Source of the DNA: Macrostomum lignano
Lineage: Eukaryota
Direction of reading: 5' to 3'
DNA length: 64,000 nt
Assembly (NCBI GenBank): GCA_002269645.1
Contig: NIVC01000841.1
Location: 186,001-250,000 of the forward strand
The notes under the pieces were generated by a model that did not search any database, was not told where the DNA came from, and saw only the letters and a list, made by a program, of their open reading frames with translations. This document shows positions 49,856-60,978 of the stretch, one piece after another; the first letter of the stretch is position 1, and the number at the start of each line of letters is the position of its first letter. The position numbers and the translations under genes were made by a program.

Positions 49856-52800
49856 ATGGCAGCAGAATCCGCTGCAGTGAGTGACCCAATTATTGTCGAT
49901 GTTGCCGAATTGACAGAGCGACAGCTTCGCAGCCTCAGCTTCCAAGAGCTGCTGGAGCTCTGGCCCGATCCGCAGCGGGAGCTGCAGCTGCGGCTGGATG
50001 ATGTCGGAGGCGGAGAGCTGCTGAGCTGTCGGCTGCTGCACGCAGCGGTAGCAGCGGACAATCGGGACGGAGTTCGAGGCCTGCTGGAGATGGCGCCGGG
50101 CCTGGCTGAGCTGAGCAACTCCGTGAGGCTGCGGTGGGGTGACGGGTGGAGTGACGAGTGGAGTGACGAGTGGAGTGACGGGTGGAGTGATGGGTAGAGT
50201 GACGGGTGGAGTGACGGGTGGGGTAACGGGTGGAGTGACATTTGAAGCGGCAATTGTAGTGACAGGTGGAGTGATAAGTAGAGTGAAATGTGGAGTGACA
50301 TGCTGAGCGACAAGTACATGTATAGTGACAGGTGGAGTGATGAGTGGAGTGACGGACGGAGTGACGAGTGGAGTGATGAGTGGTTGGTAAATTGATGTTA
50401 AATTAACCAACCAAAAGTTACTTTTCGTTTATTTACTTTCAAGTTTAACCCTCGTTTTCAACGGGTGGTGTGGAGTGACAGGTGGAGTACAGGTAGAGTG
50501 ACAGAAAGAGTGACGGGTGGGTGCCAGTCCAGCTGCCGCCCCATCAGCTTATGCCCTCCGCCCGCCTCCCTCAGCGCCGCGAGCTGCCAATCCACGTGGC
50601 CTGCCGGCTCAACCGCCCGCTTCCCGCGGCGCTGCTGCTGCCGGCGATGTCCCGGGAGGCCGTCAACTCGCTGGACGGCCGTGGCCGGGCGCCGCTGCAC
50701 TGGGCGGTCGAGCTCGGGGAGGCCGACTGCCTGGCCGAGCTGCTGGTCAGCGACCTCTGCGACCTGGCGCTGCCGGACTCGGTGAGAGCCCTGAGGAATC
50801 TCTGCTTCTAGGGGCAGACCGGAAGTGGGGAGAGGCAGTCAAGCACTTACCGGAAGAGGGGAGAGGCAGCATTGATCAGACCGGAAGTGGGGAGAGGCAG
50901 TCAAGCACTTACCGGAAGTGGGGAGAGGCAGTCAAGCACTTACCGGAAGTGGGGAGAGGCAGTCAAGCACTTACCGGAAGTGGGGAGAGGCACCATTGAT
51001 CAGACCGGAAGTGGGGAGAGGCACCATTGATCAGACCGGAAGTGGGGAGAGGCAGCATTGATCAGACGGAAGTGGGGAGAGGCAGTCAAGCACTTACCGG
51101 AAGTGGGGAGAGGCAGTCAAGCACTTACCGGAAGTGGGGAGAGGCAGTCAAGCACTTACCGGAAGTGGGGAGAGGCAGTCAAACGCAGACCGGAAGTGGG
51201 AGAGGCAGTCAACCGCAGACCGGAAGTGGGGAGAGGCAGTCAAACGCAGACCGGAAGTGGGGAGAGGCAGACAAGCGCAGACCGGAAGCGAATCCCAAAT
51301 CGCAGTCGGGCAGGTCGGCCCTGGACTGCGCCAGAGAGGCGGGTCCGAAGGCTCGCGCCTGCCTGCGGCTGCTGGAGTCCGCGGCCTCGGCGCCGTCCGC
51401 CCTGGCGCCGCTGCGGCTGCGCCGATTGGAGCCGGCGAGGAGCCACGGCTGCCGCGACAGCGAGCCGCGCGCCTGGGGAGCCACCTGCGACTCCGCGCTG
51501 CTGGCCAACAACTGCTTTGGGGAGGTGGAGTTTCCCGGCCTGGGAAACACCGCTCAGGTGAGTGCCTGTTGCAAGATTCATTGCTGTTGCTATAGCAACA
51601 CTTTCATTGCTGTTGCTATGGCAACACTTTCCATTGCTGATGCTATGGAAACACTTTTCAGTGCTGTTGCTATGGCAACACTTTTCATTTATGTTGCTAT
51701 GGCAACACTTTTCAGTGCTGTTGCTATGGCAAAACAATTGCTGTTGCTATGGCAACACTATTGCTGTTGCTATGGCAACACTGCTGACAGTTGCTACGGT
51801 ACACTTCTTATGTCCGTTTTCATGGTGGAACTTTTGCCCATGCTCGACCTTGCTATGGCAACCCTCCTCAGATTAGTTTCTGTTACCAACCCCGTCCAGG
51901 TGATGGCCTGTTTGTTTTGGTACCAGTGCATAATCGAGTCCCTCACTGTCGCTGTATTCCTACTCGGAGTACCTGTCACCATGGCAACAACATCCGCCCT
52001 CCCCACTCCCCAGTTCTGCCGCGTGGCCCAGACCTGCTCAGACGCAGACATTTCGCAGCTGCTGCTGGGCTGCTGGGCCCTCAGCAGGCCCTCCCTGGTG
52101 CTCAGCGTGCACGGCAGCGACTGCGACAAGGCCTCCTTCAAGGCGGCTTGGCAGAAGGGCCTGTGGAAGACGGCAGCTGGCTCAGGTGAGCTTCATTGGG
52201 TGCTCTCGCAAATTATGGAGCTAATTATGCATAAATTATGCTAATGAACCGCAGGTGCCTGGATCGTCACCGACTGCTGCTCCGGTCTGGCCAGAAAAAC
52301 CGGCCAGGCGGCCAGGGACTTCTGCGACGCCTATGGCTCGGACAGTGTCCGAGCGATTGGGGTTTGCAGCTGGGGGCGCTCGGCCGGCCGGGAGTGTCTT
52401 CGATCTGAGAGCTTCGCTGTAAGCTGCGCTGTGATTGGCTGAGCTGTGATTGGCTGAGCTGTGATTGGCTGCGCTGGTATTGGCTGGGCTGCGATTTGGC
52501 TGCCCTATGATTGGCTGGGCTGTGATTGGCTGAGCTGAGTGGCTGGGCTGTCATTGGCTGGCCTGTCATTGGCTGGGCTGTCATTGGCTGGGCTGTCATT
52601 GGCTGGGATGTGATTGGCTGGGCTGTGATTGGCTGGGCCTAACAACCCAGAGACCATGCAATCCCCCAGGGCTGCAACCCGGCTCACTACAAATCCGATT
52701 CGCCCAGCGATGGAGACAGCGACGGCAGCGCCAACTCGCTGGACCCGAACCACAGCCACCTGCTGCTGGTGGACTGCGCGCACCGAGACCGCGGCTGCGA

Positions 52801-60978: not shown

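What the first reader, a model, noticed from the sequence alone, without database searches (positions are those of the whole stretch)
49856..60978. TRPM-type channel with ankyrin repeats fused N-terminal to the SLOG/MHR1-4 region
Seen: 15 phase-consistent exons read 3-4 ankyrin-like repeats ([18 protein letters not shown]; [12 protein letters not shown]; [24 protein letters not shown]; [12 protein letters not shown]), then the full TRPM N-terminal series MHR1/2 (SLOG), MHR3, MHR4 and pre-S1. Exon 3 (51306-51557) carries both the last ankyrin-like element and the MHR1 start FGEVEFPG in one open frame, so the join does not depend on my choice of splice sites. Established: N-terminal ankyrins characterise TRPA/N/V/C, whereas metazoan TRPM and TRPS channels start with MHR domains and lack ankyrins. 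Flatworm TRPM paralogues include anthelmintic targets (praziquantel acts on TRPM_PZQ). Inference: this may be an undescribed Ank-TRPM subfamily with TRPA-like sensory inputs on a TRPM body.
Basis: partly seen in the sequence, partly recalled or inferred. Interest (0 to 1): 0.85.

Follow-up and report, generated by a model that had tools for sequence, protein, structure and literature searches.

The report
Flatworm TRPM channel with ankyrin head
The window holds the first 15 exons of a real, already deposited Macrostomum lignano TRPM2-like ion-channel gene whose protein starts with four ankyrin repeats in front of the usual TRPM N-terminal domain, an arrangement shared with fluke and tapeworm relatives, visible in database domain annotation, and not discussed in any paper I could search.

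Summary
The window is 100% identical to Macrostomum lignano scaffold NIVC01000841.1. The 15 exons (49856-60978, all GT..AG) encode residues 1-1009 of GenBank protein BOX15_Mlig009389g3 (1457 aa, 21 exons), a model built from RNA-seq. Residues ~54-186 form a four-repeat ankyrin domain (Pfam Ank_2 above its cut-off; DARPin and NOMPC matches; AF2 plus Foldseek). Exon 3 joins the last repeat to the start of the SLOG domain in one open frame.

The architecture is not unique to this gene. Ank + SLOG + TRPM2 domain + channel is also found in a M. lignano paralogue, Clonorchis, Opisthorchis and Schistosoma. A tapeworm homologue has an ankyrin-like sequence that falls below the Pfam threshold. All of these group with the window gene (NJ bootstrap 86%). 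Those relatives also carry a C-terminal NUDT9-homology domain, so the family is a flatworm-wide TRPM2-like clade with an added ankyrin head.

The window copy is an unusual member. It lacks NUDT9H. It is also a mosaic: exons 1-6 and exon 20 are about 99% identical to a paralogue 200 kb away, while the middle is only about 57% identical.

"TRPA-like sensory input" has no support. I rate it a new variant of a known kind, of moderate interest.

The parts
49856..50122 (+). Exon 1 (aa 1-89, phase 0). It holds the start codon, an N-terminal helical lead-in, and ankyrin repeat 1 (aa ~54-89, window ~50015-50122).
   Evidence: exact mapping. (helix pairs 56-66 and 70-79). The first 18 codons and the upstream DNA are unique to this copy; similarity to the paralogue starts at window ~49910.
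50575..50781 (+). Exon 2 (aa 90-158, phase 0-0). It encodes ankyrin repeats 2 (50575-50679) and 3 (50680-50781).
   Evidence: It is 100% identical at the DNA level to exon 2 of Mlig003066g3.
51306..51557 (+). Exon 3 (aa 159-242, phase 0-0). It encodes ankyrin repeat 4 / C-cap (51306-51389), a low-confidence linker (51390-51500), and the start of SLOG/MHR1 (FGEVEFPG at 51516-51539).
   Evidence: (the alignment to human TRPM2 starts at aa 224). (pLDDT below 50 for aa 187-220, above 90 from about aa 230).
52014..53402 (+). Exons 4-7 (52014-52185, 52255-52418, 52670-52928, 53069-53402; aa 243-551). They encode the SLOG / MHR1-2 domain.
   Evidence: LSDAT_euk; TRPM2/5/8 SLOG alignments; Rossmann-like alternation of strands and helices at high pLDDT.
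54044..59497 (+). Exons 8-13 (54044-54277, 54614-54770, 55582-55635, 55717-55856, 56627-56914, 59269-59497; aa 552-919). They encode MHR3 and MHR4 (Pfam TRPM2-like domain).
   Evidence: (PF25508, 153 bits).
60134..60978 (+). Exons 14-15 (60134-60288, 60864-60978; aa 920-1009). They encode the pre-S1 region up to the start of S1. Exons 16-21 (S1-S6, TRP helix, coiled coil) lie beyond the window end, the first at window-equivalent 64181.
   Evidence: (Ion_trans and other channel domains on the full product). (the TM region aligns to nvTRPM2, 6co7).
49910..52895 (+). The 5' tract (part of exon 1 to exon 6, introns included) that is 91-95% identical in DNA to the paralogue Mlig003066g3, which sits about 200 kb away in inverted orientation. 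This is a gene-conversion or partial-duplication tract.

Best explanation
Shown. The locus is the 5' two-thirds of a transcribed M. lignano gene for a TRPM-family cation-channel subunit. Its domain order is: four-repeat ankyrin domain, a flexible linker of about 40 residues, SLOG/MHR1-2, MHR3-4, S1-S6 with TRP helix, and a coiled-coil-like tail. The gene belongs to a flatworm orthogroup of TRPM2-like channels in which the ankyrin head sits in front of the SLOG domain. That head is found in Macrostomum and in trematodes, and in degenerate form in a cestode. The other members end in a NUDT9-homology domain.

Inferred:
- The head was gained once, before the split between Macrostomorpha and Neodermata.
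- The protein assembles as a tetramer like other TRPMs. It conducts cations, including Ca2+, and needs intracellular Ca2+ as a co-agonist. The basis is that the S2 E..Q and S3 N..D motifs and the FGEL pore motif match Nematostella TRPM2.
- The ankyrin domain hangs off the outer cytosolic ring on its linker. It most likely acts as a protein-docking or regulatory module, not as a sensor in its own right.
- The window copy has lost NUDT9H, so it is probably not gated through that domain.
- The window copy is an old, diverged paralogue (middle exons about 57% identical). Its 5' 3 kb and its exon 20 were recently overwritten by gene conversion from the NUDT9H-bearing paralogue on the same scaffold, or were assembled by partial duplication.
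For: - Gene model and identity.
- RNA-seq origin of the GenBank models: PMC5730564.
- Ankyrin domain.
- TRPM domains.
- Same architecture elsewhere, each with Ank_2 above its cut-off plus LSDAT_euk, TRPM2 domain and Ion_trans: P0158 (Mlig003066g3), P0014 (Clonorchis) and P0171 (S. mekongi).
- Among 28 TRPM relatives with long pre-SLOG N-termini, only the five flatworm sequences have ankyrin hits.
- In the full-length alignment A2 the four repeats align in register between M. lignano and the trematodes.
- Neighbour-joining bootstrap is 86% for the orthogroup and 96% for each sub-branch.
- NUDT9H is present in the relatives and absent from the window locus.
- Mosaic structure.
- Constraint on the ankyrin and linker codons since the conversion: 4 synonymous against 1 non-synonymous change.
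- Ca2+-site and pore motifs: alignment. Which residues form the site is from my memory of the TRPM2 and TRPM4 structures.
Against: - I did not examine any read-level transcript data. The exon 6-7 junction, which ties the converted ankyrin/SLOG tract to the copy-specific middle, rests only on the published StringTie/TACO model.
- The start codon lies in copy-specific sequence next to a tandem repeat and is only the TransDecoder choice.
- In the full-length AF2 model the ankyrin region has low confidence (pLDDT 40-76), so its position relative to SLOG is unknown.
- The cestode homologue has no Pfam-significant ankyrin hit.
- The short-segment alignment A4 put the repeats in a different register from the full-length alignment A2.
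- M. lignano copies lack the Cys-rich CxC..H element that trematodes keep between the ankyrin domain and SLOG, so the junctions are not identical.
- The tree is neighbour-joining on 1072 columns, not maximum likelihood, and the window gene's ends are converted.
- Function, gating and partners were not tested at all.
Confidence: 0.8

Rival explanations
1. The window copy is a young chimeric duplicate on its way to becoming a pseudogene. On this view the functional ankyrin-TRPM is Mlig003066, and this copy only borrows its 5' end.
For: - Mosaic identity: about 99% in exons 1-6 and exon 20, about 57% in between.
- Loss of NUDT9H and a 38-nt terminal exon 8.7 kb downstream.
- A new 5' end whose ATG follows a 26-nt tandem array.
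- Nearly every intron holds a tandem-repeat array.
Against: - The reading frame of 1457 codons is intact across 21 exons, and all 14 introns that lie within the window are GT..AG.
- The diverged middle of about 900 codons is still open, with the Ca2+-site and pore motifs intact, which implies long maintenance.
- The model comes from RNA-seq.
- M. lignano introns are generally rich in repeats (PMC5730564).
Confidence: 0.12
2. The ankyrin head was gained independently in Macrostomum and in neodermatan flatworms. On this view it is convergent exon capture and was not inherited from a common ancestor.
For: - Identity in the ankyrin region is low, about 20-26%.
- The junctions differ: trematodes keep a Cys-rich element that M. 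lignano lacks.
- Exons 1-3 are all phase 0-0 with borders at repeat borders, which suits exon shuffling.
- An unrelated environmental protein (P0186) also has ankyrin repeats in front of SLOG, so the fusion can arise more than once.
Against: - Both branches have the same number of repeats (four) at the same position, and they align in register in the full-length alignment.
- The orthogroup has 86% bootstrap support.
- No other TRPM relative among the top 150 has the head.
Confidence: 0.1
3. The ankyrin repeats give the channel TRPA-like sensory input (thermal, mechanical or electrophile sensing) on a TRPM body.
For: The only support is the analogy that TRPA, TRPN, TRPV and TRPC channels carry N-terminal ankyrin repeats. 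The best repeat-protein matches do include NOMPC.
Against: - There are four generic repeats, against the much longer ankyrin arrays of TRPA1 and NOMPC (from memory).
- They are attached by a disordered linker to the far end of the cytosolic domain.
- The best structural matches are generic four-repeat binders such as p16INK4a and DARPins.
- No conserved cysteine or ligand motif was identified.
Confidence: 0.05
4. The ankyrin-TRPM join is a gene-model artefact that merges a separate ankyrin gene with a TRPM gene.
For: An older ab initio model of the paralogue (P0003) clearly merges a neighbouring CLASP gene onto the same N-terminus, so merging does occur in this genome's annotations.
Against: - Exon 3 spans both domains in one frame.
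- There is no in-frame Met between M114 and M450.
- The same order is seen in independently annotated trematode genomes.
- The model is RNA-seq based.
Confidence: 0.03

Closest known systems
TRPM2-like channels with C-terminal NUDT9H (Nematostella TRPM2, PDB 6co7; human TRPM2, 6mix/6puo; the schistosome 'nudix subclade' that includes TRPM_PZQ)
   Same: - SLOG/MHR1-2, MHR3-4, six TM segments, TRP helix and a coiled-coil-like tail are all present.
- The best solved-structure match for the TM region is nvTRPM2 (E 1.5e-42), and for SLOG it is human TRPM2.
- Orthologues and the sister paralogue carry NUDT9H.
   Different: - A four-repeat ankyrin domain precedes SLOG. None of the solved TRPM2 chains aligns to that region.
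- M. lignano copies lack the Cys-rich pre-SLOG element.
- The window copy lacks NUDT9H altogether.
Flatworm TRPM_MCLZ (Smp_333650), the meclonazepam target, called 'TRPM-like'
   Same: It is a flatworm TRPM-clade channel with N-terminal ankyrin-like repeats (PMC10788528, PMC11731825, PMC12861061). M. lignano has proteins with this ankyrin-rich, SLOG-less architecture too (P0154: Ank + TRPM2 domain + Ion_trans).
   Different: TRPM_MCLZ lacks the SLOG/MHR1-2 domain, whereas the window gene has a complete one. In the NJ analysis P0154 lies on a long branch away from the window gene's orthogroup.
TRPA, TRPN, TRPV and TRPC channels
   Same: They have N-terminal ankyrin repeats ahead of a six-TM TRP pore.
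   Different: They have no SLOG, MHR or NUDT9H. Their repeats are more numerous and lie directly next to the pre-S1 region. Here the repeats are separated from the membrane by about 800 residues of MHR domains.
Environmental protein P0186 (ENA ERZ1764460, 1821 aa)
   Same: Ankyrin repeats (aa 35-111) lie upstream of LSDAT_euk (458-689) and a TRPM2-like domain.
   Different: It scored only 124 bits against the flatworm family profile. The spacer between the ankyrin repeats and SLOG is about 350 residues. The organism is unknown, and this is probably an independent fusion.

Membership tests
TRPM (melastatin) channels | N-terminal SLOG / MHR1-2 domain | tested here: met
   LSDAT_euk scores 89.9 bits against a cut-off of 25.7. 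The region aligns to TRPM2/5/8 SLOG in PDB. AF2 pLDDT is above 90.
TRPM (melastatin) channels | MHR3/MHR4 helical domains before S1 | tested here: met
   PF25508 (TRPM2-like domain) scores 153 bits. The AF2 helical repeats have high confidence.
TRPM (melastatin) channels | Six-TM pore domain with TRP helix | tested here: met
   The full product P0001 has Ion_trans and PKD_channel hits. Its TM region aligns to nvTRPM2 828-1135 at E 1.5e-42, including the TRP helix. These exons lie outside the window.
TRPM (melastatin) channels | No canonical N-terminal ankyrin repeats (as stated in Himmel 2020, PMC7306681) | tested here: not met
   Ank_2 and Ank score above their Pfam cut-offs, and the fold matches four-repeat ankyrin proteins. 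This is a descriptive generalisation about TRPM, not a defining character, so I still file the gene under TRPM.
TRPM2-like / flatworm 'nudix' subclade | C-terminal NUDT9-homology domain | tested here: not met
   The window gene ends after the coiled-coil-like segment. tblastn with the NUDT9H part of P0158 and P0009 finds nothing in L001 up to 10 kb past the gene. The feature is met in the paralogue P0158 and the orthologue P0171 (NUDT9 structure 1q33, E about 1e-21).
TRPM2-like / flatworm 'nudix' subclade | Phylogenetic placement with the NUDT9H-bearing flatworm TRPMs | tested here: met
   NJ bootstrap is 86% for the group containing the window gene, Mlig003066, Mlig025325, Schistosoma, Clonorchis/Opisthorchis, Dicrocoelium and Anoplocephala. 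An ML analysis was not run.
TRPM2-like / flatworm 'nudix' subclade | Transmembrane Ca2+ co-agonist site (S2 E..Q, S3 N..D) | tested here: met
   'IEDIRQ' and 'WNVID' align with nvTRPM2 'IEEIRQ' and 'WNFVD'. The role of these residues is taken from memory of the published structures.
TRPM2-like / flatworm 'nudix' subclade | Gating by ADP-ribose | not testable with these tools
   This needs electrophysiology. The absence of NUDT9H argues against gating through that domain. The MHR1/2 nucleotide site was not assessed rigorously.
TRPM_MCLZ-type 'TRPM-like' channels | Ankyrin-rich N-terminus with no SLOG domain | tested here: not met
   The window gene has a complete SLOG domain.
TRPA/TRPN-type ankyrin TRP channels | Long ankyrin array directly preceding pre-S1, with no MHR/SLOG | tested here: not met
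   There are only four repeats, followed by about 800 residues of SLOG and MHR.

The most novel reading that the evidence does not exclude
Flatworms possess an undescribed, ancient subfamily of TRPM2-like channels (ankyrin domain - SLOG - MHR - pore - NUDT9H). In this reading the four-repeat ankyrin head provides a lineage-specific regulatory or anchoring input. The subfamily may also be the evolutionary intermediate from which SLOG-less, ankyrin-headed channels of the TRPM_MCLZ type arose, which would give a new handle on a family that already contains two anthelmintic targets.
Probability: 0.3. Interest if true: 0.65.

Novelty: new variant of a known kind. Interest (0 to 1): 0.45.

Why it matters
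TRPM channels are routinely described as the TRP family without ankyrin repeats. Here a canonical ankyrin domain is fused in front of the SLOG domain, and the fusion is conserved from a free-living macrostomid to flukes. That qualifies the textbook statement.

Two flatworm TRPM paralogues (TRPM_PZQ and TRPM_MCLZ) are drug targets, and the remaining paralogues are explicitly flagged as uncharacterised (PMC11731825). The ankyrin-headed TRPM2-like group includes Schistosoma, Clonorchis and Opisthorchis genes. M. lignano offers transgenesis and RNAi to study what the head does.

The window copy is also a clean example of mosaic gene conversion between distant paralogues combined with loss of the NUDT9H domain.

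Tried and rejected
- Word-indexed protein search. It returned almost only M. lignano copies and generic ankyrin proteins, because low-complexity and ankyrin words fill the 8000-candidate limit. It was of no use for surveying the architecture. Its one useful by-product was P0186.
- Search for upstream ankyrin and SLOG exons of the third paralogue Mlig025325g1. I found only the second half of SLOG, just upstream of the annotated start. Whether that copy has the head is unresolved.
- Supplementary FASTA of PMC12861061, to name the S. mansoni orthologue. [quoted passage not shown] My guess that the orthologue is the 'M2' gene Smp_000050 (listed in PMC7138929) is unverified.
- Exon-versus-intron divergence as proof of selection. 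Exons differ by 0.6% and introns by about 8%, but synonymous sites differ by only about 1.7%. Intron divergence is therefore probably inflated by tandem-repeat misalignment. I rely only on the count of 4 synonymous to 1 non-synonymous change.
- Full-length AF2 model, to place the ankyrin domain against SLOG. The ankyrin region was too low in confidence to interpret.
- A short-segment alignment of the ankyrin regions (A4). It shifted the repeat register relative to the full-length alignment A2, so I did not use it for homology claims.
- Literature searches for the gene identifiers found nothing.
- The gene-model fusion artefact was considered and rejected (see rival explanations).
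Full report
**What is there.** The window is Macrostomum lignano DNA. It is identical (0 mismatches in 24,145 nt) to scaffold NIVC01000841.1 of assembly GCA_002269645.1. A word-indexed protein search with a rough concatenation of the open frames returned P0001, GenBank 'hypothetical protein BOX15_Mlig009389g3'. 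It is 1457 aa, with precomputed Pfam hits Ank_2, LSDAT_euk, TRPM2, Ion_trans and PKD_channel.

A splice-aware exact mapping places residues 1-1009 on 15 exons between 49856 and 60978. All 14 introns within the window have GT donors and AG acceptors. The gene has 21 coding exons. Exons 16-21 (S1-S6, TRP helix, coiled-coil-like tail) start about 180 nt past the window end.

The BOX15 gene models were not predicted ab initio. They come from a genome-guided RNA-seq assembly (StringTie/TACO plus a de novo transcriptome). [quoted passage not shown]

**The ankyrin domain is real.**
- Pfam Ank_2 scores 36.2 bits (cut-off 27.3) and Ank 23.7 (cut-off 21.1).
- phmmer against PDB sequences aligns aa 51-188 to DARPins, Drosophila NOMPC and ankyrin-R at E 1e-10 to 5e-15.
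- An AF2 model of aa 45-200 (mean pLDDT 80; above 90 for most of the first three repeats) shows four helix-hairpin units. It superposes on four-repeat ankyrin proteins such as p16INK4a and 4ANK 1n0r (TM 0.70/0.86, rmsd 1.8 A).
- The repeats are at about aa 54-89, 90-124, 125-158 and 159-186.
- Exon borders fall at repeat borders (aa 89/90 and 158/159), and exons 1-3 are all phase 0-0.

**The TRPM part is complete.**
- LSDAT_euk and the TRPM2-like (MHR) domain score far above their cut-offs.
- The SLOG region aligns to human TRPM2 residues 122-296 and to TRPM5 and TRPM8.
- AF2 with a 47-sequence alignment gives pLDDT above 90 through most of aa 224-950.
- The TM region of the full protein aligns best to Nematostella TRPM2 (6co7, E 1.5e-42). 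It conserves the S2 'IEDIRQ' and S3 'WNVID' motifs and an 'FGEL' pore motif.

**The join is not a modelling choice.** Exon 3 encodes repeat 4, a linker of about 40 residues predicted to be disordered, and the first SLOG strand (FGEVEFPG, aa 229) in one frame. The only methionines before M450 are M1, M79 and M114, so a protein with an intact SLOG domain has to begin in or before the ankyrin region.

**It is a family, not a one-off.** An exhaustive HMMER search of 1.84 billion representative proteins found 3130 relatives.

Among the best 150, ankyrin similarity in full-length proteins was found only in flatworm sequences. I also took the 28 relatives with unusually long pre-SLOG N-termini and scanned them against Pfam. 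Only five had ankyrin hits, and all five were from flatworms. The other long N-termini are low-complexity or obvious mis-fusions with vinculin or RNase H.

Full-length Pfam scans confirm Ank_2 (above its cut-off) + LSDAT_euk + TRPM2 domain + Ion_trans in three proteins:
- M. lignano Mlig003066g3 (P0158)
- Clonorchis sinensis KAG5447154.1 (P0014), whose 90% cluster also contains Opisthorchis viverrini T265_14336
- Schistosoma mekongi KAK4474030.1 (P0171)

The tapeworm Anoplocephala perfoliata homologue (P0058) has a recognisable but sub-threshold ankyrin-like stretch.

In the full-length alignment the four repeats align in register between Macrostomum and the trematodes. A neighbour-joining tree on 1072 well-aligned columns groups the window gene, Mlig003066 and Mlig025325 with the Schistosoma, opisthorchiid, Dicrocoelium and Anoplocephala proteins at 86% bootstrap. 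Each sub-branch has 96%. The simplest reading is a single gain before Macrostomorpha and Neodermata diverged.

The C-termini of the paralogue and the Schistosoma orthologue match human NUDT9 (1q33, E about 1e-21) and the NUDT9H domains of TRPM2 structures. The family is therefore TRPM2-like with NUDT9H and an added ankyrin head.

**The window copy is an unusual member.**
- It has no NUDT9H. The ORF ends 11 codons into a 38-nt exon 8.7 kb downstream, and tblastn finds no NUDT9H remnants in the locus.
- It is a mosaic. Against Mlig003066g3 it is almost identical in aa 19-430 (exons 1-6) and aa 1331-1446 (exon 20), but only about 57% identical in between. Mlig003066g3 lies at 13-38 kb of the same scaffold in the opposite orientation, next to a CLASP gene.
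- At the DNA level the 5' tract (window 49910-52895) is 91-95% identical including introns, and a 0.7-kb patch around exon 20 is 94.7% identical. The rest shows essentially no nucleotide similarity.
- Exon sizes 2-6 are identical in the two genes.
- The 5' border of the tract lies inside exon 1. The first 18 codons and the upstream region are unique to the window copy and follow a 26-nt tandem array.

I read this as gene conversion, or partial duplication and recombination, between an old diverged paralogue and the NUDT9H-bearing one. Since that event the ankyrin and linker codons have accumulated 4 synonymous and 1 non-synonymous difference. This is weak evidence, but it points to constraint. 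The long, still-open, diverged middle with intact Ca2+-site and pore motifs argues that the copy has been maintained as a working gene.

**How it most likely works (inference).** The protein should form a tetrameric, Ca2+-permeable, non-selective cation channel of the TRPM2 type that requires intracellular Ca2+. The four-repeat ankyrin domain is attached to the N-terminal edge of MHR1/2 through a flexible linker. It resembles generic ankyrin binding modules and most plausibly recruits a partner or tethers the channel. In the NUDT9H-bearing relatives it could also contact the NUDT9H/MHR1-2 layer. None of this was testable here. The full-length AF2 model gives the head too little confidence to place it. 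The window copy lacks NUDT9H and is unlikely to be gated through that domain.

**Comparison with what is known.** Himmel et al. [quoted passage not shown] A 2026 survey of TRPM domain gains and losses mentions ankyrins only as the divergent repeats inside MHR3/4, and does not mention flatworms (PMC13143021).

In the flatworm field, N-terminal ankyrin-like repeats are described for TRPM_MCLZ. That channel lacks SLOG and is now called 'TRPM-like' (PMC10788528, PMC12861061). The 2024 review by the same group lists an 'ankyrin repeat domain' among the domains drawn for schistosome TRPM paralogues in its Figure 1B. Its text, however, says the other paralogues have the plain SLOG-plus-channel architecture (PMC11731825). 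I could not see the figure.

No searchable paper discusses ankyrin plus SLOG in one TRPM or mentions these gene identifiers. The domain combination is nevertheless visible in public annotation, for example UniProt's 'ANK_REP_REGION domain-containing protein' for the paralogue.

**Verdict.**
The gene is a genuine ankyrin-headed TRPM, but it belongs to a conserved flatworm TRPM2-like orthogroup already present in databases, and there is no evidence for TRPA-like sensing.
- Novelty: a new variant of a known kind, in the sense that the architecture has not been explicitly described.
- Interest is moderate.

Noticed in passing
window 49910-52895, and L001 28835-29526 (window-equivalent 68690-69381), versus L002 10169-18648 and 30598-31287: Mosaic paralogy. 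Exons 1-6 and exon 20 of the window gene are about 99% identical to Mlig003066g3, which lies about 200 kb away in inverted orientation on the same scaffold. Exons 7-19 are only about 57% identical at the protein level, with no DNA similarity. This looks like patchy gene conversion or a chimeric duplication.
   Followed up: partly
L001 29100-38151 (beyond the window end): The window gene lacks the NUDT9-homology domain that its paralogue and its trematode and cestode orthologues carry. It ends in a 38-nt exon 8.7 kb downstream of exon 20.
   Followed up: yes
window 50817-51288, 51577-51782, 52423-52638, 53407-53876, 54304-54560, 55111-55360, 55918-56595, 57000-59227, 59505-59927, 60377-60796, 61087-64000: Nearly every intron of the gene holds its own tandem-repeat array (periods 3, 4, 12, 14, 15, 21, 25, 27 and 31 nt; up to 160 copies). 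Several arrays are open in all three frames (for example 53407-53876), so they mimic coding sequence in ORF lists.
   Followed up: partly
P0154 and its cluster (M. lignano BOX15_Mlig019746g1, Mlig014463, Mlig025374, Mlig032509): The free-living M. lignano has a small family of channels with an ankyrin-rich N-terminus, a TRPM2-like domain and Ion_trans but no SLOG. This is the architecture published for the parasite drug target TRPM_MCLZ.
   Followed up: partly
L004 170-5635 (ENA ERZ1764460, contig k141_23355713): An environmental single-ORF protein of 1821 aa (P0186) has ankyrin repeats (35-111) upstream of a SLOG domain (458-689) and a TRPM2-like domain. This is probably an independent ankyrin-SLOG fusion in an unidentified eukaryote.
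   Followed up: partly
L003 9761-10117: The GenBank model of the third paralogue (Mlig025325g1, P0009) is truncated at the 5' end. The second half of the SLOG domain is encoded just upstream of and across its annotated start. Further upstream exons were not found within 10 kb.
   Followed up: partly
P0003 (UniProt model from the older M. lignano assembly); L002 1-2576: An older ab initio model fuses the neighbouring CLASP_N gene onto the ankyrin-TRPM paralogue. This is a clear merged-gene artefact at the sister locus.
   Followed up: yes
window 8436-9200 (-), 10934-11419 (+), 17885-22555 (+), 36280-39597 (+): Other coding pieces lie upstream in the window: a PPP1R32-like exon, a PB1-domain exon, and a BTB plus Kelch gene interrupted by proline/serine-rich repeat arrays. 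There are also two long ORFs (36280-37419, 38920-39597) with no Pfam match.
   Followed up: partly
window 46548-47174: The 208-aa 'gene' called upstream of the channel gene in the public gene calls is an ORF running through a tandem repeat (ENRP/LRIA units). It is unlikely to be a real gene.
   Followed up: no
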